This document shows, piece by piece, positions 4,287 through 62,292 of a stretch of DNA of 64,000 nt. The stretch covers positions 83,452,001-83,516,000 of the forward strand of contig NC_083283.1 of the NCBI RefSeq assembly GCF_963506605.1. The letters run 5' to 3'. Position 1 is the first letter of the stretch, and each line of letters begins with the position of its first letter. The translations under genes and the position numbers were made by a program. This DNA comes from Zootoca vivipara. Its lineage: Eukaryota. A model generated the notes under the pieces. It saw only the letters and a program-made list of their open reading frames with translations, was not told the origin of the DNA and did not search any database.

Positions 4287-4421
4287 CAGGCACCCCTAAA
4301 CTGCGGACCTCCAGATGTTTTGGCCTACAACTCCCATGATCCCTAGCTTACAGGACCAGTGGTCAGGGATGATGGGAATTGTAGTCCAAAAATCTGGAGG
4401 GCCGAAGTTTGGGGATGCCTG
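4287..4421. mobile_element. Palindromic hAT MITE (same family as 23416 and 60690) nested in a CR1 3' end fragment (about 4273-4463)
   Basis: CAGGCA...TGCCTG termini; TSD GACAAGAT/GACTAGAT; host resembles the CR1 tail GGTTGGACTAGATGA...TTCAACTCTATAATTCTA. Confidence 0.85.
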
Positions 4422-4624
4422 GACTAGATGATTACTGAAGTCGCTTTCAACTCTATAATTCTAATATGTGAAGTGAGAACTCATGTGTCTCCACTATGAT
4501 AAAACGCAATAATTTCACCTGCTAGAATCACCCATCATTCTGTGATGCTTGTGCCTAGCCCTGCTTTGCATATTATACAGGAAGGAATAAATGTCACTCA
4601 TACCTGTTTCCCTTTGTTTCTAAC

Positions 4625-8373: not shown

Positions 8374-9584
8374 TCATCCCCCCCTCTAGGGGCCTCCTCT
8401 CCTTCCTCCCGCCTCCGCACTTCCTTACTTGGGGCGTTATGAGATACCTCCCACCATTCTCCCTCTTCACTTCCCCAATAACTGCAACCCGGTTGCGACT
8501 CTTCTACTTCTTCCTCCTCTTCAAACCCACCATTCACTTCAGCTTCCCAGTCTGCCTGTTCTGCCTGCTCCTCTACCCAACCCCGGGGTTTGGGTTTATT
8601 AGGGTACCTATGGTGAAACTCTCTCTGCAGCCTAGATGCATGTATATCACTCGCATTCACCCATGAGTTCTCCTCTGGTCCGTACCCTTTCCAAGCCACC
8701 AAATACTGTACCCCCCTGCCCCTTCTACGAGAGTCCAATAGCTGAACCACTTCATATTCCGGTTCACCCTCCACCCAGATGGGCAAAGGTGGTGGCTCCT
8801 TCCTCTTCTGATACCGGTGTCTTGGCGTTACTGGCGATAAGAGTGACCGATGGAACACCGGATACATCTTCATTGAAGTCGGTAAACGTAACTTATATGA
8901 AACAGGATTTATTTGTTCCAACACTTCGAATGGCCCTACCCGTTGCGGCAGTAACTTCTTACAACGTCCCTTGCTCGGCCAATCTTTAGTGGATAGCCAA
9001 ACTTGGTCCCCTACCCTTATCTCCTTGCCCACTTGCCGGTGTTTATCAGCTTCTGCCTTATACAGAGCCTTCGCTTTTTCTAGCTGTTCTCGCAGAATAC
9101 TGTGCAACGCTTCCATTTCTTCTGCGAACTGTTCAGCTGCAGGCACTGCCAGTCCATCTCCCTGACCTGGAAACACCCGTGGATGTCGCCCATGGCAGGC
9201 AAAAAATGGCGTCTGCTGTGTAGAAGCATGCACAGCATTATTATAAGCAAACTCAGCCAACGCTAGTTTCCCAACCCAGTCATCCTGTTGATAATTCACG
9301 TAACAACGTAGGTACTGTTGCAACGTCGCGTTCGTCCGTTCGGCCTCTCCGTTTGTCTGAGGATGCCGAGCCGATGAGAGGCACACCTCCACCTTCAGCA
9401 ATTGCATCAGTCTCCTCCAAAACTGGGAGGTAAACTGCGTTCCCCTATCAGACACAATCTTCTGCGGCAATCCATGCAATTTGAACACATGTTCTATGAA
9501 GAGTTGCGCGGTCTCCTGTGCCGACGGTAATTTCTTGCAAGGAACAAAGTGTGCCATCTTGGAGAACAGATCTACTACCACCAA
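8058..9584 (-). CDS. pol: Pol part 2: integrase core, GPF, chromodomain and a C-terminal extension through U3
   Basis: VVVDLFSK, SDRG, QTNGEAER, GPF, EYEVVQLLDSR...YLVAWKGYGPEENSW. Confidence 0.88.
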   Translation of the reverse strand: MVVVDLFSKMAHFVPCKKLPSAQETAQLFIEHVFKLHGLPQKIVSDRGTQFTSQFWRRLMQLLKVEVCLSSARHPQTNGEAERTNATLQQYLRCYVNYQQDDWVGKLALAEFAYNNAVHASTQQTPFFACHGRHPRVFPGQGDGLAVPAAEQFAEEMEALHSILREQLEKAKALYKAEADKHRQVGKEIRVGDQVWLSTKDWPSKGRCKKLLPQRVGPFEVLEQINPVSYKLRLPTSMKMYPVFHRSLLSPVTPRHRYQKRKEPPPLPIWVEGEPEYEVVQLLDSRRRGRGVQYLVAWKGYGPEENSWVNASDIHASRLQREFHHRYPNKPKPRGWVEEQAEQADWEAEVNGGFEEEEEVEESQPGCSYWGSEEGEWWEVSHNAPSKEVRRREEGEEAPRGGDDVRLEPITNEAQLSDLADSPELEGRLALIKELAGRGEQMAEITQTSEESLSESVPSSLKLQERRRGGLQDKRKWQLQRERQRALFERRNKRRWTHARELDESSSD

Positions 9585-12022
9585 ACCACTGTCTGTTTCT
9601 GCGACTCGGGCAAATCAGTGATAAAGTCCATAGCAATGCCTTCCCACGGTGCTTGTGGTGTGGGCAGTGGTTGAAGTAGCCCGGCTGGTGTTTCGCGAGG
9701 TCTTTTGGACCGTTGGCACACTTCACATGCCCGGACATACTCCTTGACCTCCTCCTGCATCCGTGGCCACCAAAAATCCCTTGATACCAGACGTTCCGTC
9801 TTCCACTGCCCAAAATGTCCTGCTGTTGGACTGTCATGGCATTGTCTCAGCACCCTCGCACGAAGCTCTCCCTCTGGCACATAGAGAGCTTCCCCCTTGT
9901 ACAGCAGCCCTCCTTTCTCAGTAAACTCCTTCCCTTGGACTTCCCCCTTACGTATTGCCTTCCTCTTCTCTTGAGCGAACCCATCCTTCTGCGTTTGTTG
10001 GAGAAAGTCTGACCGTTCTAATGCCGTCATTGTTGCTAGCTGCAGTTGTTCGGGGCTCAGGATCAATCTCCGTTCTAACCCGGTCTCTATTTCGGAATAC
10101 TCCGGTTTTCGGGACAATGCGTCCGCCCGCTGGTTCTGAGCACTAGCCACATACTTAATCCGGAAATTGAACCTGGCAAAGAATTGCGCCCACCTAATCT
10201 GTCGTTGGTTCAATTGACGAGCCGTCTGCCAGTACTCTAGGTTTTTATGATCAGTGCGTACCTCCACCTGATGCTGCGCCCCTTCCAAGAAATGCCGCCA
10301 AGTTTGTAGAGCATCCTTTATTGCCAACAACTCTCTCTCCCATATAGTATAATTTTGTTCTGACGATTTTAATTTCCTTGAGTGAAAGGCACATGGTCTC
10401 AGTTCCCCTTTGTCATCTTCCTGGAGAAGCACCGCCCCAATGGCTTTGTCCGAAGCATCAGTTTCCACGACCATCGGCTTGTACGGGTCTGGATGAGCCA
10501 AGTATCTTTCCTCCACAAACAAGTTCTTAAGTCTCTCAAACGCCTTTTGGGCTTCCTCAGTCCATTTAAACGCCTTTTTGCCTTTCAAACAATCTGTTAT
10601 CGGTGCTGTAAGGCCTGAGTACCTTGGTATAAACTTCCGATAGTAATTGGCAAACCCCAAGAATCTTTGTACATCTTTTCGAGTCTTGGGTCTTTGCCAT
10701 GACACTACTGCCTGAACCTTTGCTGGATCCATGTGCACCCCCTCTGGGGTGATTCTATAGCCTAAGAACTCCACTTCTGTTACGTGAAAGTGGCATTTCT
10801 CCAACTTAGCGTACAATCGATGTTCTCTTAGACGCTCTAACACTTCCTTCACATGTTGTACGTGTTCTTCCAGACTCTCCGAGTAGATTAATAGGTCATC
10901 TAAATAAGCAAGGACCGAACGATCCAACAAGTCGGACAACACGTAATTAATAAATGCCTGAAAGGTGGCCGTGCCCGACTGTAGTCCAAACGGCATGACA
11001 AGATATTCAAATGTGCCGTACCTGGTGTTAAATGTCGTCTTCCATTCATCTCCCTCTCTTACTCGTATCAAATTATATGCCCCCCTCAAGTCCAGTTTTG
11101 TAAAAATTTTAGCCGACCGTAATCTTTCCAACAAATCCCCAATTCGTGGCAACGGGTAACGACTGGGAATCATGCGCTGGTTGATCTTCCTGTAATCAAC
11201 TACAAGTCTTTTCTCAGAAGTGTTCTTCTTATCCACAAAGAAAATTGGAGCTCCTCCCGGAGTCTTGGTAGGCCGTATGAAACCCCGTTCCAAATTTTTT
11301 CGCAGGAACTCCCTCAGTTCTGCCAACTCCACTTCTGACATAGCGTAGATACGGCTGGCGGGTATCTCAGCCCCTGGCACCAGATCTATTTTGCAATCGT
11401 ACTGGCGATGCGGTGGTAACCGATCTGCCTCCTTCTCGCAGAATACGTCTCTAAAAGACTTATACTGTGGGGGTATTTGTCTCTCTTCCCCAGTGAGCGG
11501 ACCACAGTCTGGCGTACCATTGGCCTCACCATTCTTCTCCGCCCTGATTCCCAAACAATGTAGTCGGCAATACACTGACGAAAAGGTCATCGATCTCTGG
11601 CCCCAGGAGATCATCGGATCATGACGGGATAGCCAACTCATCCCCAAAACCACGGGGTAGGAGTTCAACCTGGTGATATGGAATGCAATGACCTCTCGGT
11701 GTCCCGGCAGTTCTAGACCAATTGGCATTGTGGCCTCTGACACACAGCCAGACAGCAACACTCTACCATCAATTGTTCTAACTTCTAAAGGTTCTTCCAA
11801 TGACTGTGTCTCTATTCCCAACCTGCTCACCAAGTCCATGTCTATAAAATCAGTCGAGGCTCCAGAATCAATAAGAACTTCCACACGCTCGCCCCTTCCA
11901 TCTGGGAGTCGTAGCATTGCGAATGCTGTAATTACTGGTAAGATCGGTCCAGGTGGAAGCCCTTTGGGTCTCTTTTCCCCCAACCCGAGGCCTCCAGAAC
12001 GGGCTGGGTCATCTCGTTTCCC
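9575..12022 (-). CDS. pol: Retrotransposon Pol part 1 (protease, RT, RNase H, integrase N-terminus), entered by -1 frameshift
   Basis: LIDSGAS protease; KLDLRGAY and YLDD of RT; ETDAS, ELLAI and TDHKNL of RNase H; HHCC zinc finger; ends at a 1-bp frameshift near 9584. Confidence 0.9.
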   Translation of the reverse strand, partial: GKRDDPARSGGLGLGEKRPKGLPPGPILPVITAFAMLRLPDGRGERVEVLIDSGASTDFIDMDLVSRLGIETQSLEEPLEVRTIDGRVLLSGCVSEATMPIGLELPGHREVIAFHITRLNSYPVVLGMSWLSRHDPMISWGQRSMTFSSVYCRLHCLGIRAEKNGEANGTPDCGPLTGEERQIPPQYKSFRDVFCEKEADRLPPHRQYDCKIDLVPGAEIPASRIYAMSEVELAELREFLRKNLERGFIRPTKTPGGAPIFFVDKKNTSEKRLVVDYRKINQRMIPSRYPLPRIGDLLERLRSAKIFTKLDLRGAYNLIRVREGDEWKTTFNTRYGTFEYLVMPFGLQSGTATFQAFINYVLSDLLDRSVLAYLDDLLIYSESLEEHVQHVKEVLERLREHRLYAKLEKCHFHVTEVEFLGYRITPEGVHMDPAKVQAVVSWQRPKTRKDVQRFLGFANYYRKFIPRYSGLTAPITDCLKGKKAFKWTEEAQKAFERLKNLFVEERYLAHPDPYKPMVVETDASDKAIGAVLLQEDDKGELRPCAFHSRKLKSSEQNYTIWERELLAIKDALQTWRHFLEGAQHQVEVRTDHKNLEYWQTARQLNQRQIRWAQFFARFNFRIKYVASAQNQRADALSRKPEYSEIETGLERRLILSPEQLQLATMTALERSDFLQQTQKDGFAQEKRKAIRKGEVQGKEFTEKGGLLYKGEALYVPEGELRARVLRQCHDSPTAGHFGQWKTERLVSRDFWWPRMQEEVKEYVRACEVCQRSKRPRETPAGLLQPLPTPQAPWEGIAMDFITDLPESQKQTVVWW

Positions 12023-13014
12023 GACTGCTCCACTATGCCCTCTCCAGGTGTTGTTACATTTGTGCCAGACAGCGCACCTCGGTTTCTTCCTACAGTACAC
12101 TGACGAGCCATGTGATTGGGGGAGCCGCAGATAAGGCACAACCGATCTCTCCACCTTCTCTCTCTCTCAGCGTGTGTAATACTAGGTGTTGTACCCCTTC
12201 TGATAGAACTACGTTGCATGGGTGCTTCTTCCTCCACCCTTCGTGAATCCGGCAGCTCTAAGGGCACAAATGTCCTGCGGCTCTCAGACCTTCCTTGGCC
12301 CCTACGCAACCTGTCCAGCGATTGGAACCTCAGGTCTAGTTGCAAGGCGACTTGTGCCACCTCTTCCAAGGTCTTCAACCCAGGATTTTTTGCCAACTCC
12401 ACCCGAATCTCTTCACTGAGTCCCGCCTTAAACAATCCAACCAAGGCCTTTCCTTCCCAGCCTAGTTGTCTAGCAAGTCTCACAAAAGAGGACCAGAACT
12501 GTGCTACAGTTCCCTTTCCTTGCTTAAGGCTCAAGAACTCCTGTTCCCACTCTGCTTCTTGTGCAGGATTCCTGAACATGCTATCCAGAAGCTTCAAGAA
12601 GGCTGATAAGTTGGTGAGCACTCGGTCATTAGACATTAGGTAAGGGGCAATACACTGCCGCGCCTTCCCTTCCAAAAGCCCCACCACCAGGGCCACTCTG
12701 GCATCATCATCTCTGTATTCTTCCCCCTTAAGCCTTAAATAATACAAGCAGGAAGCCCGAAATGAATCATACTCTGCACCGCTCCCACTAAAACGTGGGG
12801 GAAGGGGAACAAAATTCTTTGCCACTTGCCTGCCAGATAAGTCAGAGAGTTGTCTTGCTTGTTCTGAGGTCACTCCTTCCAGCCGTGCTAATCTTGCCTT
12901 CAACTCTTGGTTCTCTGCCCAGAGAGCTTCAGTATTATCTTCTAACTTCATCTCCATTGCTGTTGCGCCAACTGATAAATCCCCAGCCGGTTGCTGCTTC
13001 CCCTTTTCTTCCAT
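11932..13014 (-). CDS. gag: Retrotransposon Gag
   Basis: 360 aa; coiled coil, PPRFSG motif, LKQGKGTV MHR-like segment, zinc knuckle CLICGSPNHMARQC. Confidence 0.9.
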   Translation of the reverse strand: MEEKGKQQPAGDLSVGATAMEMKLEDNTEALWAENQELKARLARLEGVTSEQARQLSDLSGRQVAKNFVPLPPRFSGSGAEYDSFRASCLYYLRLKGEEYRDDDARVALVVGLLEGKARQCIAPYLMSNDRVLTNLSAFLKLLDSMFRNPAQEAEWEQEFLSLKQGKGTVAQFWSSFVRLARQLGWEGKALVGLFKAGLSEEIRVELAKNPGLKTLEEVAQVALQLDLRFQSLDRLRRGQGRSESRRTFVPLELPDSRRVEEEAPMQRSSIRRGTTPSITHAERERRWRDRLCLICGSPNHMARQCTVGRNRGALSGTNVTTPGEGIVEQSGNEMTQPVLEASGWGKRDPKGFHLDRSYQ

Positions 13015-13504: not shown

Positions 13505-13636
13505 CTAATAAATATAAAACCATGTGCTATTTATAATAACAGCCTCCAAGATAGTATTGTAGATCAGCAGATAGATGTAAAATTCACCAAGATGAGTAAG
13601 TTCATATAAAATCAAAAGATAACCTGATTAACTCAC

Positions 13637-16060
13637 CTGGGCTATGACTGGATCACCATCATTCAAATTTAAATTTTCACCAGATATGATAGGATTCTTT
13701 ACCTCACAAGTTTGTTGATTGCTCAGAGTATTGGAATAATTTGCCTTGGAAATACTAAATTGACTTTTCTTAGAGTCTGTAGTAAGAGAAACTTCCTGGC
13801 AGTAGGAGTGCAGAAATGCTCGGACTCCGTCAATCCCCACAAACTGTGAGATAGGAGCCCCACTGAAATTCATACTCCCCGACTCAAGCAGCTGAGAATT
13901 TCTCCACCTGTGCAACTTGATGGCCACTAACACAAGGAGGAAAGTGAAGAACAAGCAGGAGACAAAAGCCACTGCAAGGACCAGGTAGAAGGTGAGGTCC
14001 GACGGAGGCTCTACAGGAGCTGAGATGCTGCTCAGGTCTGAGAGGATTGCAGGGATGGTGTCAGCCAGCACCACAGTCAGAGTGGCTGAAGCAGAGAGAG
14101 GTGGCTGCCCATTGTCCTTGACTAAAACCACCAGGCTTTGCTTGAGGGCATCTTTCTCCAGAAAGAAGCGGGCTGTCCTGATCTCTCCTGTGTGGAGCCC
14201 CAGAGTGAAGAGCCCTGGCTCGGTGGCCTTGATCAGCTGGTAGGAGAGCCAGGCATTCTGGCCAGAGTCTGCATCCACGGCCACCACCTTAGTGACCAGG
14301 TAGCCTGGCTCAGAGGAGCGAGGGGCCAGCTCTATCCCCGTGGAGCCATCGGTGGGAGGGGAGGGGTACAGGATCTGGGGAGCATTGTCATTTTGGTCCA
14401 GGATGAAGAGAGTCACTGAGATGTTGGAGCTGAGTGGTGTAGAACCTCCATCCTGGGCCTTTACACGGAACTTAATCTCCCGAAACTCTTCATAATCAAA
14501 GGAGGTCAGAGCATATATAACCCCCGTCTCAGAGTTAATGGAGAGGTAGGAGGAGAGGCGGGAGTCACTTCCTTGGTCATCAGTGATGGAATATGTTATT
14601 CTGGCATTTTCTTCCCAGTCAAGGTCATTTGCTCTTAAGGAAGAGACCATTGCTCCTCTTTGGTTATTCTCCACAAAATAGAAAGTATAGTCTGTTTTTT
14701 CAAAGAGGGGTGGGTTGTCATTTGTGTCTAAAACATGAAGTGTGATAACTGTGACTGTAGAAAGAGGGGGGACTCCATGGTCAGCAACTGTCACAGTAAT
14801 ATTGAAGACTGACACCTGTTCTCTGTCAAGGGCACCATCAGTCACCAAACTGTAAAAGTTATCCATGGACTTCTTTAGCTGGAAAGGGAGGTTGCTAGGG
14901 ATTGAACATGTGATTTCCCCATTGATTCCTGAATCTCTGTCTTGGACATTTAAAATGGCAATTACCGTTTGGGATGGTGAACTTTCAGGTATGGTGTTGC
15001 TGGCAAAGGTAACTGATAATTCAGGTGCATTGTCATTCAGATCCGTAACAGATATCACAACTTTTGATCTGTCACTCAGGCCTCCTCCATCTTTGGCTTG
15101 TATCTCAAATGCATATAAAGATGATTCCTCATAATCAAGATTCCCAATAAGGATGATTTCACCTGTTGTGGAATTTAATAGAAACATTTGGGAGTATCTC
15201 TTTGTGATTTTTTGGAAGGAGTATTTTATGTCTCCATTGATTCCTTCATCCATATCAGTTGCTCTCACTGTCAAAACTGTGGACCACTTGGGAATATTCT
15301 CATTGACACTCACTTCATAGAGAGGTTGGCTGAAAACTGGTGAATTGTCATTTGCATCAAGGACAACGATGTGGATTTGTAATGTGCCAGTCCTGATGGG
15401 ATCACCTCCATCAGTAGCTGTGAGGAGCAAATCGTAAGTTGATTGTTCCTCTCTATCCAGTGACTTTTCCAACACAAGTTCAGCAAGTCTGACTCCATTT
15501 TCTTCTGTTTGCACATGCAAAGCAAAATGGCTACTGCCTGTGAGTTGATAGCTCTGCACGGAATTTATCCCCAAATCTGGATCTTGAGCTTCGGGAAGAG
15601 GGATCTGGAATCCAGGTATAGATGCCTCACTGATTTCCAGCTCCTGTTCCCCTAGAGGGAAGTGGGGAGCATTATCATTTATATCTATAATTTCCACTTC
15701 GATTCCATAAAGCTTCAGTTTGCTTTCAACAAGAATCTGAAACTTCAGTATACATTTCTCTGCCTCTCCACAAATTTCCTCTCTATCTATTCTTTCAGAT
15801 ATCTGCAAATGGCCATTGTTGGCATTCAAAGAAAAGTACTGAATCATACCTACAGGGGAAACAATTCGAAGTCCATGGTCTGGGAGCTGCTTGCCATCCA
15901 TTCCCAGGTCCTTTGCAACATTCCCCACGGAAGAGCCTTTGTGCATCTCTTCTGGAATGGAGTAGTGGATCTGCCCAGAAACTGCCTTCCAAGAAAACAT
16001 GATGAAAAGCCACTTGAAGATTCTCTTTCTGCCATTCCACAGTCTCTGAATTCCTTCCAT
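13637..16060 (-). CDS. PCDHGA: Protocadherin gammaA-like variable exon 2
   Basis: 810-aa ORF, six cadherin repeats, gammaA tail; donor CAG|GTGAGT at 13637/13636, phase 0 (2424 bp). Confidence 0.95.
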
Positions 16061-16247: not shown

Positions 16248-16275
16248 TGGTGAACAGTGACACCCAGAGGCTCAA
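16248..16275 (-). promoter_or_regulatory. CSE for exon 2 (CACT variant)
   Basis: TTGAGCCTCTGGGTGTCACTGTTCACCA about 196 bp upstream of the ATG. Confidence 0.8.
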
Positions 16276-18135: not shown

Positions 18136-18286
18136 NNNNNNNNNNNNNNNNNNNNNNNNNNNNNNNNNNNNNNNNNNNNNNNNNNNNNNNNNNNNNNNNN
18201 NNNNNNNNNNNNNNNNNNNNNNNNNNNNNNNNNNNNNNNNNNNNNNNNNNNNNNNNNNNNNNNNNNNNNNNNNNNNNNNNNNNNNN
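18136..18286. other. Assembly gap (151 N)
   Basis: Run of n. Confidence 1.
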
Positions 18287-19032
18287 ATCATGCCAAGAGA
18301 AACTCCCTTTCGATGCCACTCTTCCACACAGGTTGTACATGATAGCTTCCGACAGTGCTCCACCACTTAATATGTTGTGCTATTCTCATCAGACCCAAAT
18401 CCCAAGCTGTGTCTGTGACCAGAACACAATATCCAAATGCTATGTAAGATTATTTGTATATATGAGAACTAAATCAAGTTATTCTTAAATGTTTAGTGAT
18501 TAATTGATCCTTTACTCTCATTAAATAATCCAACCCATAAAAAACTCCACAAACACTTCCTAAAATTCAGTTGAAAAACTACTAAGAAATTTACCAACTT
18601 ATTTAAAGAATATGCTATGAAAGACTTTTTGGTATTCTTGTAAATTTCTTAAAGGACAGAATGTAAAAATAACTACATATTCAATTGCATTTGTACTGCA
18701 AAAATAAGAAAAGAAAAAAATAGCATTCTCTCTGCCCAGCCATCACTCTGTGATCTTACCACAGCACCCTGAGTTACCATGCAGATGTGCACCTAGACAA
18801 TTCTGACAGAGCCTCCGCCATCCTGCAATGCTGTCCTTCAGTAGTTGCTGGAAAGTCCAATTAGCTTGCTCTCCAGCAGTAGCAGCTCAGTACTACTTCC
18901 TACCTACTTCCCTGGTGACATGGCCTGAACTGTCTGGAATGCCAGTTTGATAACATCCACTGTTTATAATAAAACTCTCAAACAAGTGACAACACACCTA
19001 ATTCCCTAAAAAGAAAATGCAATATAACTCAC

Positions 19033-21462
19033 CGTGCTGTCATTTTCCTTTTCAGAATTTAAATTGCCTCCACTGACCATCAAAGAAATGTCAGAGTTGC
19101 CATTGCAAATGATGTTCTCTGCTAATTGGACAGTGGGCTGCAGGAATGTCAACTCATTCCTCCTGGATTCAGAGGACAGACAGACCTGGTAGGAATAAGG
19201 CAAAGTTCCGTCCTCATAATTTGGTGGGAATATGGCACCAGCCTTTGAATGGGGGTCAGGAATAAAGCACTGAAGGAAAGTGGGGTTCCTTGACCTTCGA
19301 AGCTTCATCAGAATGGTCAGAATCACCGTCACCAGGAACAGAAAGGACACCAGGGTCAAGGCCAATACCAAATAAAACTGCAGATCCGACTGATACTCTG
19401 AGTCATTTGGTTGGGAGTTCATTTCTGGAAGAGCCTCCTGGAAGTTCTCAGCAAACACCAAGCTCAAAGTTGTGGTGGCTGAGAGAGGAGGATGCCCATT
19501 GTCCTTCACCAGGATGACCAGCCTCTGCTTCACTGCATCTCTCTCAAGTAATGCTCGGACTGTTTGCACCTCTCCTGTGTGGGAGCCAATACTGAAGAGT
19601 GAGGGCTCTGTGGCCTGCAGGAGATGGAAGGAGAGCCAGGCATTGTGTCCCGAATCAGAGTCCACCGCCACCACCTTCGTCACCAGATACCCCGACTCAG
19701 CTGACCGAGGCACCATCTCAAAGAAAGGTGAGCCCTCTGTTGATTGTGAAGGGTACAGGATCTGCGGAGCATTATCATTTCGATCCAAAACACATACTGT
19801 CACTGTGGCACTGGTATAGAGTGGTGGAGAACCTCCATCTTGGGCCTTCACTTGAATCTGAAACTCCCTGAATTGCTCATAGTCAAAGGAACGTTGGGCA
19901 TAGATGATCCCAGTCTCAGAGTTAATGGAAACATAGGAGGAGAGAGGCAGGTCCTTGATGTTGCTGTTAAGGATGGAGTAAGTGATTTGGGCATTGCGAT
20001 CCAGATCTGGGTCAGAGGCCTTGACGTGGAAAATTGAAGTTCCAGATGGATTGTTCTCTGGAACATAGGCAGTATAAGAAGATTTTTCAAAGGCTGGTGG
20101 GTTATCATTGATATCTGAGATCTGTATTAATACGGATTTTTGTGTGGAGAGTGGAGGTGTGCCTTTGTCTGTGGCTATGATTGTAATATTATACTCTGGA
20201 GTCCTTTCTCTGTCAAGGGCACCATCTATGAGGAGCTTGAAGTAATTATCTGAAGATGAGACTATCAGGAAAGGTACAAGCTCCTTCAGGTGACAGGTGA
20301 CTTCTCCATTATCCCCAGAATCCCTGTCCTGAACTTTAATGAGAGCAATCACAGCTCCAGATGTGACATCTTCAGGAACTGGGCTGGACACAGATGTAAG
20401 GATCACATCTGGAGTATTGTCATTCTCATCAAGAACCTCAATCTCCACTTTGCAATGTGCCGCCAATCCTCCTCCATCATTTGCCTGAATTATCATCACA
20501 TAATATTGACTCTCTTCAAAATCAACACTTTCTATGAGTGTAATTGTTCCGTCTCTGGGATCCAGATGAAACTTCTGTTCAGCTGTTTCCGCAATGTCAC
20601 TGAAAGTATAAGTGATGTCAGCATTTGACCCTTCATCACTGTCAGATGCTTTGACTCGTAGCACAGAGGTTCCTTTGGGTGCACTCTCCTTCAGGCTCAC
20701 TTTATAGATTGTCTGGGTGAAAACAGGGGCATTGTCGTTAATATCAATAACTGTAACCAATATTCTGGCTGTTCCAGTTTTTGGAGGTTCTCCACCATCC
20801 ATGGCTGTAAGGACCATGTGGTGTGTGTGTTCCTTTTCCCTGTCCAGTTTCTTCTGCAATATTAATTCTGCATATTTGCCGCCATCATTGCCGTTTTGGA
20901 TTTCCAACATGAAATATGGAGTTGAGCTCAACTGATAATTCTGGAGGGAATTTGTGCCAATGTCCTTATCTTCAGCATTTCCTAGAGCATATCGAGTTCC
21001 TGACGGAGTAGACTCACTCAATTTAAGCTCAATATTTTCATTCCGGAAATGTGGGGCATTATCATTAATGTCCTGGATAAAAATATTTATGTGGAAAATA
21101 TTCAAAGGGTTGTGTGCCACAACTTCTAATTTGAGGACACAAATTGATGATTTACCACAAATCTCTTCCCGGTCTATCCTCTCATTCACATACAGATTGC
21201 CATTTTGTTCATTCAGATCAAAGAATTGCTTTTCTGAAGAAATCCCAAGCTTGCGCTTTGACAGCTCTCTGATATCCAACCCCAGATCTTTAGCAAGGTT
21301 CCCCACAAAGGAGCCCTGCTCTGCTTCCTCTGGAACTGAATACTGAACCTGCTCAGACACTACCTGGCAGCAGAACACAGACCAGAATATGAACAGAAAC
21401 AGTACTTGCCTCTTGGTGATGTCTCTTGTTCTCTTTGCCTGCTTTACCTCCATCAAATCCAT
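19033..21462 (-). CDS. PCDHGB: Protocadherin gammaB-like variable exon 3
   Basis: Six cadherin repeats; gammaB-type features [19 protein letters not shown] and [11 protein letters not shown]; first in-frame ATG at 21462 (alternative 21453; the ORF-track start 21504 is TTG); donor ACG|GTGAGT at 19033/19032. Confidence 0.9.
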
Positions 21463-21696
21463 TTCATTTCCTGATTTCTCCTCCTCCTTCACTTCAGTTT
21501 TCAAGACTCCCAGTACACTTAAGTGAGATAATAGAAATATTGTTCTTTTGAGCTGATCCTTGGGAAACTGAGAGCTTTCCTTTCTTAAGCAGCTTTTAAA
21601 ATAAAAGCTTTTTCTTTCTGCTTCACTGATGTGTTAAGAGAGAGAGAGACTGCTCCAAGAGCCTCACAAATGCTGAGCCATGGCTGCTCCCATGTT

Positions 21697-22253: not shown

Positions 22254-23415
22254 TCCCTGCCAGAATTCAGGTGATTTGGCCTTTATTTAATTATGAACTT
22301 GTTTAGGAAATTTAAATTTTGTATTTTGTTCTGTCTTTAAGATTTTGGTGCATTGTGTGCTTTATTTCTGTTCTGTTGGCCATAATAAAATGCTGGAAAA
22401 GGAGTTTAAATTCACTTTAGCACAGGATAACGCTTTCATTCTTTAGTCTTATGCATATTCATTTGACATTTTTCTCATATGTTCGTAATCTTCCCTGTGG
22501 CGTCTGGCTGGCCATTGCTGCACTAGAGGAAGTTTTGGGTGATACATCTTTCCTTACGATTCTGTGTGATGATTCCCAATTCCTTAGGTGGTGAATTATT
22601 CAATATTCTCCCTTAGACTTTTTTTGGATGCTTTTCAATGGTATTTCCCATATGATCCTTTTGAATAATTGGTTTTTCATTTCTGTTTTCATAGTATTGG
22701 TACGTAATTCTATACAACCTTTGCTAGTAAGATTTTATTACAGTTTTTACATTGCAATCCTATACCAACTTACCTGGGTATAAACTCCATTGAAGTCAAT
22801 GAAACATATCTGAAGATAAAAGTTTTGTTAGATGTATTACGTTTTTGGATTGCTTTGGCACATGTGGAAGTTTACTGTAATTAATCAGGAATGTTTATGA
22901 CATGAAGAAAAAGCTTCTACACAAGTGCATTCAAAGTGTGCACTACTCTGCCAGAATTTCAGTTTGTCAGACTGTAAACTGAAATGCAATAATTAATTGT
23001 GGTAGTAGTAGTAGTAGTAACAATAGTAGTTTTGAACTGAGAACTTTCTTTTCTGTCATTATTGTATCAGTGCAGAGCCATTCCGCAGGTTTTGAGTGAT
23101 AAGAAACTTTATTTAGGGGATCTAAGATATATCCAGAACTGCTTGTATCCACTCTTGACTTAAATGCAATCATAGATTCGGAATGATTTCGTAACATTCT
23201 ATCAGTCTTATTGTTGGTATTAATTTGATAGGTTGAATGCTTATTGCCTGAAAACGTGGAGTTATCAGTGAATAGTAACACCATTGTTCAATATAGAAAA
23301 ATTAGCTAAATACATAGACTAAAACACAATGCATACACATAACAAAATGAATCTATATTTGACTAATGACCCAGTCCAGCAAGGTAGATTAGAGGATGGA
23401 TGTCTCCTTCTAGCA

Positions 23416-23536
23416 CAGGCATCTCCAAACTCGACCCTCTGGATGTTTTTGGGACTACAACTCCCATCATCCCTAGCTAGCAGGACCAGTGGTCAGGGAT
23501 GATGGGAATTGTAGTCCCAAAACATTTGGGGGCCTG
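23416..23536. mobile_element. Palindromic hAT MITE, right arm partly deleted
   Basis: CAGGC...GCCTG; perfect TSD TTCTAGCA; same internal sequence as the copies at 4287 and 60690. Confidence 0.85.
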
Positions 23537-24713
23537 TTCTAGCACATGGCTCCTGATATGGGATTGGGAACTGTAATGAAGACAGAATAGGGTAGCTATT
23601 TCAGCATGCAATTCCCACCAGCACTCAAAGTGCATATAGCAACACCCCCTTTCCTTCCAGGCTTAGAGGTACTTTATGCCTACTGTGATCAATTATTACT
23701 TGCACATAACTAGACACAAGCTACACCTTTTTAAGAATAGTGGTTGGCAAAGAGAACCAGAAGATCATGTTACCACAGGAAAATGTATTTATTTGTTCAA
23801 AATAGGTTCACCTCAGCTTTTAGTCCAGGGACTTCCAAAGCACATCACAACTTGAATGAAATCAACCAACCAACCAACAGGGAGGTGGAAGAAGTAATTG
23901 ACAGTGTAATTGAACATAGAGGTCTTCACAGCCTGTCAGTTAATGAGGAGGGCAATCAGACTTCCCAGGGGGGAGGCATTACAGAACAGAACAGGGGGCC
24001 AGAAGTAATCTGCCAGGGGCCGTATGCAGATGCTGGGCAAGACAAAAGCCAGTGGTGGACAGGGCTGAAGCCGAATGTGGGCACAGTCGGGGGAGGGGCC
24101 AAGACAAAAGGGCCACCCCTTCCCCCCCTCTTTCTGCTATCTTCTTTCCCCCTCTTTTCCCCTCCTTGCGACTCACCAAAGTGAGAATACCACCCACTGT
24201 GCCTTCTGGCATGTGTCTCAGCCAATCAGACCTTCAGTTGCCATGTTTCAAACAGTGAAAATCCAGACAGAAAAGTTGTTGGGCAAGATCGCAACTGCCA
24301 ACATGGGCTGCCATGCGTCCAGATTTTCCCTAACATTTTTCCGATTTCTGCCCAGATGATGCTGACAAATTCTGGATATGTCTAGGAAATTCTGGACATA
24401 TGGCAAACCGAAAGAACACAGAGCAAGGCCTATGATGAGAAATAAAAACAGTGGGCAGGCTGGTTTGTGTAGGTAGTTTGTTCAAACCACAGTAAAGCAG
24501 CCTTCAGGAATGCACCCTTAGCTTTAACTAAACACGCAAGGGAAGGGCCTCGGGAAGAGATGTGCAATCTACACCATGCTGTGGGTCTTCTTAGTCTCCC
24601 ATTCCTGGATGGTGATTGCCTGAGCCAGGAAACCTTTTGTACTCAGGAAAGTTTCCTATGCATTTTAGAATACTGAGAGATCAAATGGGAAGTATTGAAA
24701 TTTATGTGCTCAC

Positions 24714-40232: not shown

Positions 40233-40798
40233 CTTAAATACCTCCAAATACTAGAACACAAAGCTGTGCTGATGTATGTGCCTCTCTATTGCCTTAAATA
40301 TAGTTCAGATTGTATGCAGCTGACCAAACCTTAGTACTGATCCTTTCCCCTCTACAGCAACCTCCTGCATTGTGGCAGACAAGTGGAAAAGCCAAGTATC
40401 ATTCCCCGCCTCCTAAACACTTCTGTGATAGAATGAAGACTATTGTTCCTGTGACTGTTTCTAACCTGATCAGAAGGTGGATTTCGATATAAGTTATGTA
40501 CAATAAAGGTCTTTAGGAATAGTACACAAAATTCCTATCAAAACAAAATCTGATCCAGCTTTCCATTATCCTTAGAATATTTGTTTAAAATATGACATAG
40601 ATCAAAATACATTATTTATTAGAATCAATAAAGTAAGTGCTTCATCATTTAATGAAACACCATCTCTCTTTACATCTTTATTACAGAAAGCATAAACAGA
40701 TTTTTTCCAGGATTTGTTATTTAAGAAATTCTTTTAAATTTCATAAAATAGAACCTATTGAATAATGGGGGCCAAAGTATTGAAATTTATGTGCTCAC

Positions 40799-43228
40799 CT
40801 GATGGATTGCTGCCTCCTCCGTAACTGTGTTAGAATCACCTATGAGTAACACAGAGCCTGGCTTATCAGGAACCTGTTGTGGTGTCAAAGTATTGGTGCA
40901 GCTTCCGATTGGGAAAAGAATCTGACTTTTCCGAGAGCCTGACGTCAGTGAAACCTCGTGACAATAAGACTGAAGAAATGCCCGGACTCCATCAATCCCC
41001 ACAAACTGTGAAACTGGTGCACCACTGAAATTCAAACTTGCATTATCACACAGCTGAGAATTTTTCCACTTGCGAAGCTTGAGTGCCAATAACACAAGGA
41101 GGAAGGCGAGGAACAAGCAGGAGACAAAAGCCACTGCAGTCACCAAGTAGAAGGTGAGATCTGACTGTGGGTCTTCAGATACTGGGATGCTGCTCATATC
41201 AGTCAGCATGTCAGGGATGCTGTCAGCCAAGACCACAGTGACAGTGACTGAAGCCGACATTGGAGGCTGCCCATTGTCCTTGACTAAAACCACCAGGCTT
41301 TGCTTGAGGGAATCTTTCTCTAGAAAGAAGCGGGCCGTCCTGATCTCTCCCGTGTGGAGCCCCAGAGTGAAGAGCCCTGGCTCGGTGGCCTTGATCAGCT
41401 GGTAGGAGAGCCAGGCATTCTGGCCAGAGTCCGCATCCACGGCCACCACCTTAGTGACCAGGTAGCCTGGCTCAGAGGAGCGAGGGGCCAGCTCTATCCC
41501 CGTGGAGCCATCGGTGGGAGGGGAGGGGTACAGGATTTGGGGAGCATTGTCATTCTGGTCCAGGATGAAGAGAGTCACTGAGACGTTGGAGCTGAGTGGT
41601 GGAGAACCTCCGTCCTGAGCCCTTACATGGAACTTAATCTCCCGAAACTCTTCATAATCAAAGGTTCTCAAGGCATAGCCAACCCCTGTTTCCGAATTAA
41701 TGGAAAGGTAGGAGGAGAGTGAGGAATCAAACATTTGACTATCAATGATGGAATAGGTTATTTTTGAATTTTCCCCCCAGTCTGGATCCTCTGTTTTCAA
41801 AGAAAATATGGTGTCCCCTCTCTGGTTGTTCTCCACAAGGTAAAAAGTGTATTCTGGTTGCATAAAGTATGGAGCATTGTCATTCTTGTCTAAAACCTGA
41901 AGAAGGATTAAGGTGGTTGATGAAAGAGGTGGCATGCCTTGATCTGAGGCTGTGATAGTGATGTTGTAGGCTGCTACTTGCTCCCTGTCCAGTGGTCTAG
42001 CAATGACCATAGTGTAATAGTTAGCATTTGTTTTTGTTAAATGGAAAGGGATATTACTAGGAATAGAGCATATGACTTTCCCATTCTCTCCTGAATCTTC
42101 ATCATGCACATTTATCAAGGCAATGGCAGTTCCTGCTTGAGAATCCTCAGGAACTGAATTGGCAAGTGATCTGACAGCTATTTCAGGTGCATTGTCATTA
42201 ACATCACTTACAAAAATCACAGCTTTTGATATATTAAATAGTCCTCCCCCGTCAATGGCCTGAATCTCTATTTCATACAGTGTAGATTCTTCATAATCCA
42301 GCTTCCCCACAAGAATAATTTCACCTGTCTCTGAGTTTATGTGGAAGTTCTGAGAAGCTTTGTCAGATATTTTTCTGAAGCTGTATGTTATTTCTCTGTT
42401 GATTCCTTCATCCAGGTCAGTGGCTTTTACTGTGACTACTGTATAGCCTGTGGGCACATTTTCTGCAATGGTCACTGTGTATTCAGGTTGGCTAAAAATG
42501 GGTGCGTTGTCATTTGCATCAAGGACAATAATGTGGATTTGGGTTGTGCCAGATTTGGGTGGATCCCCCCCATCAAAAGCTGTGAGAATAAGATCATGCA
42601 CATTTTGTTCTTCTCGGTCCAGTGATGTTTCCAGTACAATCTCTGCATATATTGCACTATCCAATCTAGTTTGTAGATCCAGAGAAAAGTGTCTGTTTGC
42701 ACTGAGTTTATAATTCTGGACAGAATTCATCCCTAAATCTGGATCCTGGGCATCTTCCAGACGGAATCGTGTCCCACGTTCAGTCACCTCACTGATTTTT
42801 ATCTGGAGTTGAGCTGATTTGAAGCTTGGAGCATTGTCGTTGACATCAATTATTTCTACTTCACTTGTATAAATCTTCATTGCATCTTCTATAATAACTT
42901 CACAATTAAAGAGACATCTTTGTATCTGGGGACAGGTCTGCTCTCTGTCCAGTCTTTCCTTTATGTATAAATGGCCATTCTTATTGTTTAAAGCAAAATA
43001 TTCCACCTTACCTCTGCAAACAAAGCTGACTCCATAAGGTGAGAAATCCTTTATATCCAGTCTAAGATCCTTTGCAATATTCCCCACAAAGGAACCTTTT
43101 GGCATTTCCTCAGGAACTGAATAATGAATCTGTTCAGTAGCAGTCTCGCATACGATGCAAAAAAATATGATGAAAATGAGAGCTGTGTCCTTGTAGAACC
43201 AAAGACAGAAATGTCTTGCAACAGCCAT
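40799..43228 (-). CDS. PCDHGA: Protocadherin gammaA-like variable exon 6
   Basis: ATG at 43228 (ORF-track start 43234 is TTG); cadherin motifs, gammaA tail; donor CAG|GTGAGC at 40799/40798. Confidence 0.95.
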
Positions 43229-43429
43229 TTCCAAATGTTATCTTCTTACTTTCAGCCCCTTAAACTTGGATGCTCTGAATCTATTGTTTGCCAATATTTT
43301 AGGAAAAATAAAATAAAATAGCAGATCCAATGGATGGTTTCCTAAATCTTTGTTTCTGTTCCCTTGCTTTCCTTTTCTAGGCGGAGCAGCAGGACTGAGA
43401 TGGCAGCTTCTCTCATTTCTCTGCCTGAT

Positions 43430-58539: not shown

Positions 58540-58893
58540 ATACATATGAAGATCCACTACCATTTAAACACAAACATTAAACAAAGGAGATGTTTCTTAA
58601 GAAGTGTGTTAAACTTAGATTAAATGTGAAACAGCAAATTACAGTGTGAATAAGTAAAAAAAGGCAAAATTATCTTCAAGATTATAAAGATTTGTTAAAT
58701 GTTTCAGTTCTTACAGTGATTCTTACAGAAACACTTGTTCAGCTGCAGTGAAGTTATTCTTGAACATTAAATAAAGGGTAAAAATAATACAACTAGATAA
58801 ATATATTGACATAATCTTAGAGAGCAATTTTCACACAAATATTCATCACCAATTTATAAAACCTTTTCAAAGTTTAGTGAATGCAAAACATAC

Positions 58894-61455
58894 CTGTTTG
58901 CAGCTCTGCCCTTCCTTATTGATATTTGAATCATTTGCAGTAAACAGAGGTCCAGAGATTTGAGAAGCCTGATGTCCTGTCAGTGTGTTTGTACAGCTTT
59001 CAATGGGGAAAAAAATCTGACTTTTCCGAGAGCCCGAACTGAGTGAAAATTCATGGCAATAAGTCTGAAGAAATGCCCTGACTCCATCAATGCCTACAAA
59101 CTGTGAAACAGGAACCCCATTTAAATTTACACTTCCAGTGTCACATAACTGAGAATGTCTCCACTTACGAAGCCTTAGTACCAATAATACAAGGAGGAAA
59201 GTGAAGAACAAGCAGGAGACAAAAGCCACTGCAGTCACCAGGTAGAAAGTGAGGTCAGACTCAAGACTGATAGGAGCTGAGATGGTGCCCAGATCAGTGA
59301 GCATGTCAGGGATGCTGTCAGCCAAGACCACAGTAACAGTGACTGAAACCGACATTGGAGGCTGCCCATTGTCCTTGACTAAAACCACCAGGCTTTGCTT
59401 GAGGGCATCTTTCTCCAGAAAGAAGCGGGCTGTCCTGATCTCTCCCGTGTGGAGCCCCAGAGTGAAGAGCCCTGGCTCAGTGGCCTTGATCAGCTGGTAG
59501 GAGAGCCAGGCATTCTGGCCAGAGTCCGCATCCACGGCCACCACCTTAGTAACCAGGTAGCCTGGCTCAGAGGAGCGAGGGGCCAGCTCTATCCCTGTGG
59601 AGCCGTCGGTGGGAGGGGAGGGGTATAGGATTTGGGGAGCATTGTCATTTTGGTCCAGGATGAAGAGAGTCACTGAGACATTGGAGCTGAGTGGTGGAGA
59701 ACCTCCGTCTTGGGCTTTGACCAGGAACTTAATCTCTTGAATCTCTTCATAATCAAAAGACCGTAAGACATAGATTACTCCAGTCTCAGAGTTTATAGAA
59801 AGGCAGGAGGAGAAGAAGGAGTAACTCATCTCACCTTCAGTGATTGAATAAGTAATTTTGCCATTCATCTCCCAGTCAGGATCAGTTGCTTTTAGTGTTA
59901 AAACAGAGGCTCCAGCTGAAGTATTTTCTGTAATTGAAGTAATATAGGACTTCTTTTTAAAGGTGGGTGGATTGTCATTTTTATCTAGTATTTTCAGTTG
60001 AATAGTGGTGGTTGTGGAGAGAGGAGGATTTCCTTTATCTGTTGCAATAACTGTAACATTGTAATTAGATACATCTTCTCGGTCCAGGGCTCTGCCAGTC
60101 ACTAAACTGTAATAATTATCAAACGTTTTCTCTAAATGAAATGGCGGGTTGCCAAAGATGGAGCAGGTAACCAGCCCATTGTCTTCAGAATCTCTGTCTA
60201 TTACTTTTAACAGGGCAATTATCGTTCCTTCTGGGCAGTCTTCACTCACAGCATTAGTAAGAGATGTGACTGCAATTTCTGGTGCATTATCATTTACATC
60301 AGTAATAGCCAACAAAATATTCGCTCGACCCGATAAGCCTCTTCCATCACGAGCTTGGACCTCCATTTCATACAAAGCACATTCTTCAAAATCTATCTCC
60401 TGCCTCACCCTTACTTCTCCAGTTCTCGGATCCAAATGGAAACTATTTGAAGCCTTTTCTGATACCTGCCTGAATGCATATGTTATCTCTGAATTAATGC
60501 CTTCATCCAGATCAGTAGCATGGACTGCTACAAGCAGGGAATTAACAGGAATGTTTTCTGCAGTGGTCACTTTATAAACAGATTCTGAAAAAACTGGCGC
60601 ATTGTCATTTGCATCTTCAACAGAAACTTTGATGTGTGCAGTTCCGGATTTGACAGGATTCCCCCCATCACTGGCTGTAAGGATTAAGTCAGGCATGTCA
60701 AACCTGCGGCCCTCCAGATGTTTTGGCCTACAACTCCCATGATCCCTAGCTAGCAGGACCAGTGGTTGGGGAAGATGGGAATTGTAGTCCAAAACATCTG
60801 GAGGGCCGCAGGTTTGACATGCCTGGATTAAGTCATGGAAAGCTTCTACTTCTCGGTCCATAGACTTTTCCAGTACTAACTCAGCATATTTGGCTCCACT
60901 TGCTGTCATTTGCACATCAAGAAAGAAGTGTCTGTTAGGGCTGATTTGATAGCTCTGTAAAGCGTTCACTCCTAAATCTGGGTCCTGTGCATCTGGAAGG
61001 AGGAATCGGGATCCCACAGGTGTACTTTCTGGGATATTTAGCTGCAATGTCTCCACTTGGAAGGCTGGCGCATTGTCATTGATATCTTCGATTTCAATTT
61101 CTACTGTATAGACTTTTAGCTGCTCCTGAATAAGAATCTCCAACTTCAAAATACAAGTTAACAGACGTCCACATATTTCTTCTCTATCTAGTCTTTCATT
61201 AATATATAAATGGCCATTTTGGAAATTGAGGGCAAAATATTGTGTCCTACCTTCTGTAATAATCTGGACACCGCCAGGCAAGAGTTGCTTCATATCCAAT
61301 CCCAGATCCTGTGAGATATCCCCAACAAAAGAACCTTCCTGCAGTTCCTCAGGAACTGAATAATGGATCTGTCCAGCAACTGCCTGAAAAACAGCTAGCA
61401 GTACAAGGCAGGATGACCGTCTCCTTCTATCCAAGAGTATTTGTATACAAGCCAT
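58894..61455 (-). CDS. PCDHGA: Protocadherin gammaA-like variable exon 8, carrying an in-frame 48-aa MITE-derived insertion in EC2
   Basis: 862-aa ORF, about 48 aa longer than its paralogs; tail [17 protein letters not shown]; donor CAG|GTATGT at 58894/58893. Confidence 0.9.
60690..60825. mobile_element. Palindromic hAT MITE inserted in the coding sequence of Pcdh exon 8
   Basis: 37-bp perfect TIRs CAGGCATGTCAAACCTGCGGCCCTCCAGATGTTTTGG; perfect 8-bp TSD GATTAAGT (60682-60689, 60826-60833). Confidence 0.97.
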
Positions 61456-61664
61456 TTCAGCCTCTGCCAGGTCCTATCAGTCCATAGATAACAAGCACCA
61501 GTGTTTAAAGGCTCTCTTAATAGACTAATGTGCCTGTTTAAGGCTTCCTTTTATTTTCCATCAAACAAGATCCTCCTTTTTCTTTTAGGTCAGAGATTAT
61601 AATAAACCTTTTGTGTCTTTGCATCTCCGTGATCTATCTGGTTCAATCCAGTTTCTCTCCTCCT

Positions 61665-61692
61665 TGGTGAACAGTGACACCCAATGGATCAG
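61665..61692 (-). promoter_or_regulatory. CSE for exon 8 (CACT variant)
   Basis: GATCCATTGGGTGTCACTGTTCACCA about 218 bp upstream of the ATG. Confidence 0.75.
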
Positions 61693-62292
61693 TCAGTAAA
61701 TGCAGTGTTTTAAAAAGCTTTACAAAATAACATTTCATTCCTTTTTATTTAATAACAGGTATAAAAACAAACTTCCATTAACGTACTGCATCCCGTCTAG
61801 AAAGCTCAATGGAGATTGGGTAAGCACCACAATGGATGAGAAACACAGTGCAGCTCCTCTTCAGCAGGATTGTGTCAAAAGTAATCAGTGACTATTGATC
61901 TAATGACAATTTCCACCTTAGTTTTTTTAATCAACCTAATTCAGAGTGCAATCACATGGTTTTTTTGAAGTGTCTTCTCCCAGTGTGGGAGTAGGGTTGC
62001 TGGAATGAGGGAGGGAAGGGGCAGAGCCGTGTGTGTGTGTTTAGAGATGTGGGCTCAGATTTTATGCTGGATAGCCTTGCCTACATCTTCACTCAGAGGT
62101 AACCTGCTGGTGAATATTTAGTGTGTAGGGTGGTAGAAGACAGCAGCCAGTGAGGGAAAAGCACTCTGCACCTGCTCAGACATGCTTTTCTTTCCATATA
62201 ATAGTATCAGGTCTGCTATTGAAGACAGATTCTTAGACTAAGTACTGGAGGGTTCTTACTCAAATTAAGTCAGGGAAGACAGAGGCAAGAAT

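What the first reader, a model, noticed from the sequence alone, without database searches (positions are those of the whole stretch)
60682..60833. hAT MITE inserted in frame into the EC2 recognition domain of a protocadherin
The 136-bp element plus 8-bp TSD equals 144 bp, or 48 codons, with no stop: ...MDREVEAFHDLI-QACQTCGPPDVLDYNSHLPQPLVLLARDHGSCRPKHLEGRRFDMPDLI-LTASDGG. The TSD regenerates DLI, so the native F strand DLILTASD is intact after the insert. The new peptide, with three cysteines, effectively sits in the loop after the DRE calcium motif. EC2-EC3 contacts are major determinants of homophilic specificity in clustered protocadherins. The product could be a new neuronal identity code, a cis-acting dominant negative or a misfolded null. 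Perfect TIRs and TSD indicate a recent event, and family members occur at 4287 and 23416. This is direct transposon-to-protein conversion without splicing.
Basis: partly seen in the sequence, partly recalled or inferred. Interest (0 to 1): 0.85.

Follow-up and report, generated by a model that had tools for sequence, protein, structure and literature searches.

The report
Unfixed in-frame MITE in lizard protocadherin
A small cut-and-paste transposon sits in frame inside a neuronal adhesion gene in the reference common lizard, but another common lizard and a close relative lack it and no RNA shows it in use, so it is a young insertion allele and not a shown new protein function.

Summary
A 136-bp near-palindromic MITE (60690-60825) lies in an otherwise intact clustered-protocadherin variable exon (58867-61455, minus strand). 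It has perfect 37-bp terminal inverted repeats and an 8-bp target-site duplication, GATTAAGT. It adds 48 codons without a stop, in EC2 between the DRE calcium motif and strand F. Seven paralogs in the window lack it. Related copies at 4287 and 23416 carry their own 8-bp duplications.

The genome is Zootoca vivipara. Contigs of an independent conspecific (X4) and of a roughly 3% divergent relative (X15) cross the site with exactly 144 bp missing, which is the empty site. The insertion is therefore not fixed, and may be private to the reference animal.

Two RNA runs gave no reads on the exon. Nothing here shows expression, retention of the insert, or the 138-nt intron that NCBI's model uses to skip most of it.

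Only one of six orientation and phase combinations of this copy is stop-free. The insert folds into a -112 kcal/mol hairpin in the mRNA sense. AlphaFold2 gives it as a low-confidence loop at the EC2 E-F connection.

Most likely it is a young segregating allele that impairs one redundant isoform or is neutral. It is a new member of a known kind, of modest interest.

The parts
60690..60825 (-). 136-bp non-autonomous, near-palindromic MITE. It is read in the sense of the host exon as codons 211-255 plus the first base of codon 256.
   Evidence: Perfect 37-nt TIRs and 63-nt arms at 90% complementarity. 93-94% identity to two other copies in the window. Word depth in X4 is 1.7-3.5 million against 16 for the flanks.
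60682..60689 (.). Target-site duplication, copy on the low-coordinate side (GATTAAGT). In the mRNA this is the second DLI.
   Evidence: The joint in X4 and X15 removes exactly the MITE plus one copy, 144 bp.
60826..60833 (.). Target-site duplication, copy on the high-coordinate side (GATTAAGT). In the mRNA this is the first DLI.
58894..61455 (-). Clustered protocadherin variable exon, from the ATG at 61455 to the splice donor AAACAG|GTATGT. The last exon base is 58894. The open frame reads on to a stop at 58867.
   Evidence: Pfam finds Cadherin_2, five Cadherin stretches and Cadherin_C_2. 100% identical to NCBI 'protocadherin gamma-A10-like [Zootoca vivipara]' outside residues 203-248. Donor read. 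The listed differences from the related taxon are 25 synonymous and 12 non-synonymous.
60712..60849 (-). 138-nt stretch that NCBI model P0006 treats as an intron. The donor GAA|GTAGAA is in native sequence and the acceptor CTGGAG|GGC is inside the MITE's 3' TIR. It removes residues 203-248.
   Evidence: No RNA read covers it. The 25 nt ending in the acceptor AG are only 36% pyrimidine.
61664..61691 (-). Protocadherin promoter conserved sequence element about 215 nt upstream of the ATG. Its CGCT box reads CACT.
   Evidence: Alignment of seven upstream regions. Coordinates.
4287..4421 (+). Related MITE copy in intergenic DNA, with 8-bp duplication GACAAGAT/GACTAGAT at 4279-4286 and 4422-4429.
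23416..23536 (+). Related MITE copy with a shortened 3' arm, and a perfect 8-bp duplication TTCTAGCA at 23408-23415 and 23537-23544.

Best explanation
This is a young, unfixed insertion allele. A non-autonomous MITE of the 8-bp-duplication (hAT-like) class was cut and pasted by a transposase supplied in trans. It landed in the EC2-coding part of a gamma-A/beta-type clustered protocadherin variable exon of Zootoca vivipara. By chance it landed in the one orientation and phase, of six, in which this copy has no stop codon, so the 2.6-kb exon stays open and 48 codons longer. That much is shown.

The following is inferred. The allele most likely weakens or abolishes this one isoform. The mRNA carries a roughly 57-bp, -112 kcal/mol hairpin inside the coding region. 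The protein would carry a 40-plus-residue, three-cysteine, low-confidence loop at the E-F connection of EC2. That loop would lie next to the EC2-EC3 calcium site, which is at the centre of the antiparallel EC1-4 trans dimer. The aromatic residue that normally precedes strand F would be replaced by proline. The allele can persist at low frequency because each lizard has dozens of redundant isoforms, and because carriers may be heterozygous.
For: Anatomy of the element, the duplication and the frame.

Species, and an otherwise identical gene model.

Empty site: one 5264-nt contig of an independent conspecific (X4, depth 16) and one 1772-nt contig of a related taxon (X15) each skip exactly 144 bp between 60680 and 60825. 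With 31-letter words, such a contig cannot arise from the insertion allele.

Insertion-specific words: X1, from the source sample, holds 1.00 of the sampled words. X2-X6 hold 0.94. X4 has no listed difference between 60200 and 61460 apart from the insert.

The host gene was under constraint before the insertion: 25 synonymous against 12 non-synonymous listed differences, a conserved promoter element and a splice donor.

Hairpin: -112.4 kcal/mol, z -16.6.

AlphaFold2: EC1-3 near pLDDT 90, insert residues 216-250 below 50, and strand F built from the second DLI copy.
Against: No read evidence was laid for the source animal itself; only its word share (1.00) shows the junctions. Whether X4 also carries an insertion allele cannot be excluded from contigs.

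The functional effect is entirely inferred. The two RNA runs had no coverage of the exon (their tissue is unknown, and about 6% of each run was read), so the allele could still be expressed in brain.

AlphaFold2 keeps the EC2 fold intact around the insert, so a folded, surface-delivered protein is not excluded.
Confidence: 0.78

Rival explanations
1. The insert is removed from the mRNA as a new 138-nt intron, as in NCBI model P0006. The donor GAA|GTAGAA lies in native sequence and the acceptor lies inside the MITE. The product would be a near-normal 816-aa protein in which VEAFH is replaced by GRRFDMP.
For: P0006 is 100% identical to the ORF except for residues 203-248. The stretch starts with GT, ends with AG, and is a multiple of three. 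AlphaFold2 folds EC2 of P0006 normally, with only residues 203-206 below pLDDT 50.
Against: No RNA read covers the exon, so no spliced read supports it. The donor lacks G at -1 and +5. The 25 nt ending in the acceptor AG are 36% pyrimidine. The acceptor lies inside the long hairpin. From general knowledge, automated models place such short introns to keep a protein alignment in frame.
Confidence: 0.1
2. One reading: the insert is translated and the protein reaches the cell surface. The new EC2 loop changes homophilic recognition, or acts as a cis dominant negative. That would make it a functional new isoform.
For: Open frame. The EC2 fold and strand F are retained in the model. EC2:EC3 contacts matter for specificity. 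The stop-free frame is unusual for the family.
Against: The allele is not fixed: it is absent from another conspecific and from a related taxon. There is no expression evidence. The insert is a low-confidence loop with three cysteines and forms a strong hairpin in the mRNA. There is no sign of selection on an allele this young.
Confidence: 0.07
3. Assembly artefact: a MITE copy was wrongly placed in the exon during assembly or polishing.
For: The MITE family is extremely abundant. Only runs of the source sample show the insertion-specific words.
Against: There is a perfect 8-bp duplication of the exact sequence that is single in the empty allele. X1, a run of the source sample, holds 1.00 of the sampled words, junction words included. 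This copy has termini and an inner segment that differ from most other copies.
Confidence: 0.04

Closest known systems
Non-autonomous hAT elements and MITEs of lizards, as catalogued for Anolis carolinensis (Novick et al. 2010, PMC3014272)
   Same: 8-bp target-site duplication, terminal inverted repeats, small size with no coding capacity, very high copy number, and evidence of recent movement.
   Different: The terminus CAGGC fits only four of the five positions of the YARNG motif given there. No autonomous partner was identified here. This copy lies inside a coding exon and is open in frame.
Clustered protocadherin variable exons: anole cluster, Jiang et al. 2009, PMC2764143; mouse gamma-A structures 5SZN, 5SZM and 5SZL, Goodman et al. 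2016, PMC5106212
   Same: A single ~2.4-kb exon encodes six cadherin repeats, a TM segment and a short tail. It has its own CSE promoter and a 3' splice donor, and sits in a tandem array of paralogs with a near-identical EC6-TM region.
   Different: It carries a 48-residue insert in EC2 that has no counterpart in any solved structure or any paralog. The anole paper reports 14 pseudogenes, half of them single-nucleotide indels, but it never uses a word beginning 'transpos'.
Transposon insertion polymorphisms in coding exons, and exonisation of transposable elements
   Same: A mobile element contributes sequence to an open reading frame. Presence and absence alleles both segregate.
   Different: Most animal exonisation works through new splice sites in intronic elements. 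Here the element is inside a pre-existing exon and is read through, at least at the DNA level.
Rfam mir-5408 (RF04264) microRNA precursor family
   Same: The MITE core 60716-60799 aligns to the whole model with clear sequence likeness in both arms and a hairpin fold.
   Different: The score is 46.8 bits against a gathering score of 90, so it is not a member by Rfam's threshold. The likeness more probably means that mir-5408 precursors derive from a related MITE.

Membership tests
hAT-superfamily non-autonomous element (MITE) | 8-bp target-site duplication | tested here: met
   GATTAAGT on both sides. The other two copies have TTCTAGCA on both sides and GACAAGAT/GACTAGAT. The empty allele holds one copy.
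hAT-superfamily non-autonomous element (MITE) | Terminal inverted repeats; short, with no coding capacity | tested here: met
   37-nt perfect TIRs in a 136-bp element.
hAT-superfamily non-autonomous element (MITE) | Terminal motif YARNG (as stated in PMC3014272) | tested here: inconclusive
   The terminus is CAGGC in all three copies. Positions 1-4 fit and position 5 is C, not G. The boundary is ambiguous by 1-2 nt.
hAT-superfamily non-autonomous element (MITE) | An autonomous element with matching TIRs that encodes a hAT transposase | not tested
   No tool here searches this genome as a whole. No such element lies in the window.
Clustered protocadherin variable exon | Six cadherin repeats, TM segment and short cytoplasmic part in one ~2.4-kb exon | tested here: met
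   Pfam Cadherin_2, five Cadherin stretches and Cadherin_C_2. Best solved relative is mouse Pcdh gamma-A9 EC1-5, E 1.4e-144.
Clustered protocadherin variable exon | Tandem array of paralogous exons, each with its own CSE promoter | tested here: met
   Eight exons on the minus strand. The CSE is conserved upstream of seven of them. Its CGCT box reads CACT in this gene and in one paralog.
Clustered protocadherin variable exon | 3' splice donor joined to shared downstream exon(s) | tested here: inconclusive
The donor AAACAG|GTATGT is present. Splicing was not observed because the RNA runs had no reads on the exon.
Rfam mir-5408 | Score at or above the family's gathering threshold (90 bits) | tested here: not met
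   46.8 bits on the plus strand and 44.8 bits on the minus strand.

The most novel reading that the evidence does not exclude
The insertion allele is transcribed in neurons, is read through without splicing, and yields a surface-delivered protocadherin whose new EC2 loop alters or blocks homophilic matching. That would be a segregating natural case of one-step transposon-to-protein conversion in a cell-identity gene. It could be tested by comparing carriers with non-carriers in wild common lizards.
Probability: 0.06. Interest if true: 0.65.

Novelty: new member of a known kind. Interest (0 to 1): 0.3.

Why it matters
The finding shows that a very abundant MITE family moved recently enough in the common lizard to leave presence and absence alleles. 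Recent DNA-transposon activity is uncommon among amniotes.

It gives a natural allele pair, differing by 144 bp, for testing how much insertion an EC2 domain of a clustered protocadherin can tolerate.

It also flags an annotation problem.

It does not show a new protein function.

Tried and rejected
RNA evidence: two raw-read RNA runs of the species (X21, X22, about 6% of each read) gave zero depth on the exon outside the MITE. All laid reads came from other MITE copies, and 98% of them run on into unlike sequence. This gives no verdict on expression, retention or splicing. X15 is only guessed to be RNA, so I did not count it as expression.

Rfam: apart from mir-5408, the microRNA matches (mir-3160, mir-2483, mir-727, MIR1508) are generic long-hairpin matches below threshold. 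A paper search for mir-5408 found nothing.

Peptide search: phmmer of the 51-aa insert region against 1.84 billion representatives found only two proteins (P0121, P0122). Neither was scanned against Pfam, and I see no cadherin motif in either sequence. Within that library's limits, there is no sign of the same insert in other protocadherins.

The NCBI model P0006 and the paralogs served as the insert-free comparison.

I did not try a complex prediction of the trans dimer, because I make no binding claim.

Subfamily label: the earlier scan note calls the subcluster beta. NCBI's name, the best solved relatives and the EC6 GLHT loop point to gamma-A likeness. This is left open.

Full report
**1. 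What is in the sequence**

The stretch 60682-60833 reads GATTAAGT, then a 136-bp element (60690-60825), then GATTAAGT again.
- The element's outer 37 nt are perfectly inverted. A 31-nt TIR pattern matches only these two places in the window, against 0 expected in shuffles.
- The whole element is a near-palindrome, with 63-nt arms 90% complementary around a 22-nt centre.
- The direct repeat is really 11 nt, GGATTAAGTCA. The flanks happen to continue the match, so the boundaries are ambiguous by 1-2 nt.

The minus-strand ORF 58867-61455 (862 aa) runs straight through the element. The MITE begins at the first base of codon 211, and MITE plus duplication adds exactly 48 codons.

**2. The host gene**

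Pfam finds Cadherin_2, five Cadherin stretches and the protocadherin cytoplasmic Cadherin_C_2 domain. The window holds eight such exons in tandem on the minus strand. In their alignment, the 48 residues are a gap in all seven paralogs, and EC6 to TM is almost identical among most of them.

The exon has what a working variable exon needs:
- A conserved promoter element (CSE) lies about 215 nt upstream of the ATG.
- A good splice donor, AAACAG|GTATGT, lies at 58894/58893.

The best solved relative is mouse Pcdh gamma-A9 EC1-5 (5SZN, E 1.4e-144). HMMER splits the match in two at the insert, which has no counterpart in the structure.

**3. Whose genome, and how the public annotation treats the insert**

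The best protein hit is NCBI's 'protocadherin gamma-A10-like [Zootoca vivipara]' (P0006, 816 aa). It is 100% identical to the ORF except that residues 203-248 are missing. So the window is from the common lizard.

The public model removes 138 nt (60712-60849) as an intron. The donor, GAA|GTAGAA, is in native sequence upstream of the MITE. The acceptor, CTGGAG|GGC, is inside the MITE's 3' TIR. The model protein keeps seven MITE-derived residues, GRRFDMP, in place of VEAFH.

Both splice sites look weak:
- The donor has no G at -1 or +5.
- The 25 nt ending in the acceptor AG are 36% pyrimidine.
- The acceptor is paired inside the hairpin described in section 7.

**4. The decisive result: the insertion is not fixed**

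I laid four runs on 59600-61700.
- X4 holds contigs of an independent sample of the same species from another study. One 5264-nt contig, at depth 16, covers 59651-60680 and 60825-61700 and skips exactly 144 bp.
- X15 is a related taxon with about 3% differences. It shows the same joint in a 1772-nt contig.

Both carry the empty site with a single copy of the duplicated octamer. Words that span an empty site cannot come from an insertion allele, because the duplication is far shorter than the 31-letter words. The empty allele therefore really exists in those animals.

X4 has no other listed difference from the window between 60200 and 61460. Its word share of 0.94 is therefore what the loss of insertion-specific words should give.
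- X3, X5 and X6, covering two further samples, have the same 0.94.
- X1, from the source sample, has 1.00, so the junction words are in that animal's raw data.
- X2, from the same source sample, has 0.94. This is a weak hint that the reference animal is heterozygous.

**5. RNA**

The two raw-read RNA runs of the species (X21, X22) have zero depth on the exon on both sides of the MITE. The thousands of reads on the MITE come from other copies, and 98% of them run on into unlike sequence.

About 6% of each run was read, and the tissue is unknown. So this is no evidence against brain expression. It also gives no support for read-through translation or for the NCBI intron.

**6. Was the gene alive before the insertion?**

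Among the differences between the window and the related taxon that one search lists inside the exon, 25 are synonymous and 12 are not. That is the pattern of a constrained coding sequence. The list is partial: 37 further differences were not shown.

**7. What the insert would do**

*RNA level.* In the mRNA sense the element folds into a nearly perfect hairpin of -112.4 kcal/mol, against a shuffle mean of -48.4 (z -16.6).

Its core aligns over the whole length of Rfam's mir-5408 precursor model, with clear sequence likeness, but at 46.8 bits against a threshold of 90. A duplex of this length inside a coding region could plausibly hinder translation. It is also a plausible substrate for double-strand-RNA enzymes. 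That is inference.

*Protein level.* AlphaFold2 on EC1-3 with the insert gives the following:
- The three cadherin domains stay near pLDDT 90.
- Residues 216-250 fall below pLDDT 50.

The insert sits at the E-F connection, eight residues after DRE. From general cadherin knowledge, that is the end of EC2 that faces the EC2-EC3 calcium linker, at the middle of the antiparallel EC1-4 dimer. The EC2 beta4-beta5 loop, just upstream of strand E, is a documented EC2:EC3 contact (bioRxiv 10.1101/493106).

The insert brings three cysteines. It also replaces the aromatic or histidine residue that precedes DLI in all paralogs with proline.

I infer that misfolding, retention or a steric block of trans binding is more likely than a clean new specificity. 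None of this is shown.

The NCBI 'spliced' form folds normally, apart from residues 203-206.

**8. How surprising is the open frame?**

For this copy, one of the six orientation and phase combinations is stop-free. The two other copies in the window have stops in all six frames.

The exon copy differs from them at 60767-60782, reading TTGGGGAA where they read TCAGGGAT. That difference removes the TGA in the frame used. Many reads from other copies also break off at that segment.

Three clustered changes are unlikely to have arisen after so young an insertion. The source copy probably already had them. An open in-frame hit is uncommon, but it is what a scan that looks for open frames will pick out.

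**9. The element's family**

All three copies in the window have 8-bp duplications and start with CAGGC. That matches the hAT features given for Anolis in PMC3014272, namely 8-bp duplications and termini of the form YARNG, except at the fifth base.

Word depth over the MITE in X4 is 1.7-3.5 million against 16 for unique sequence. The tool warns that this is not a copy number, but it shows a very abundant family.

Most other copies diverge from this one in the outer 14 nt of each end, reading CAGGCATCCCCAAAC. About a dozen X4 contigs match right up to the terminus. I found no autonomous partner and could not search for one.

**10. Verdict**

The insertion is real and in frame, but it is a presence/absence polymorphism and is possibly private to the reference animal. 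There is no evidence that it is expressed or useful.

It is a new member of a known kind, a transposon insertion polymorphism in a coding exon. Interest is modest. It documents recent MITE movement in a lacertid, offers a natural allele pair for testing EC2 tolerance, and exposes a doubtful intron in the public gene model.

**Limits**

Noticed in passing
window 61664-61691 (-) and 16249-16265: The invariant CGCT box of the protocadherin promoter element reads CACT in the insertion gene and in paralog 13628-16060. The X4 contig is identical to the window from 60825 to 61700, so the CACT form is not private to the reference animal. It might lower the chance that these two promoters are chosen.
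   Followed up: partly
window 60716-60799, both strands: The MITE core aligns end to end with Rfam mir-5408 (46.8 bits, E 1e-7, below the gathering score of 90) with real sequence likeness. This suggests that this microRNA family derives from a related MITE.
   Followed up: partly
window 60712-60849 (-); protein P0006: NCBI's Zootoca gene model hides the MITE behind a 138-nt intron with weak splice sites and encodes seven MITE-derived residues, GRRFDMP. It also reads through the exon's splice donor to KQVCFAFTKL.
   Followed up: partly
window 58867-61455 (-), EC6 region; The earlier scan note calls this subcluster beta. The closest solved structures are mouse gamma-A9, A8 and A1 (E 1e-144 to 1e-132, against 1e-99 for beta6 and beta8). 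The EC6 DE loop reads GLHT, the gamma-A signature in PMC5106212. The subfamily label is unsettled.
   Followed up: partly
window 8058-13014 (-): A Ty3/gypsy-type LTR retroelement lies between two protocadherin exons. It has long open gag (360 aa), protease-RT-RNase H-integrase zinc finger (859 aa) and integrase core-SH3-chromodomain (508 aa) frames. I described it only.
   Followed up: partly
protein P0095 (Podarcis muralis): Its signal peptide and EC1 are almost identical to the insertion gene. From EC2 onwards it matches paralog 40787-43234 better. It is either a chimeric gene model or the result of gene conversion between neighbours.
   Followed up: no
protein P0122 (376 aa), residues 120-165; This is one of only two proteins among 1.84 billion representatives that hold a related MITE-derived peptide in the same frame. 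The peptide lies between two copies of a repeated stretch that reads like a Myb/SANT-type domain (read by eye; no Pfam scan was run). It is a possible second case of this MITE family inside an annotated coding sequence.
   Followed up: no
window 9: columns 600-800 of alignment A1: EC6, the TM segment and the start of the tail are nearly identical among seven of the eight paralogs, while EC1-EC4 are 50-65% identical. This fits homogenisation of the 3' part of the exons.
   Followed up: no
window 18136-18286: A run of 151 N lies just downstream (lower coordinates) of the exon at 19006-21504. I left it as it is.
   Followed up: no
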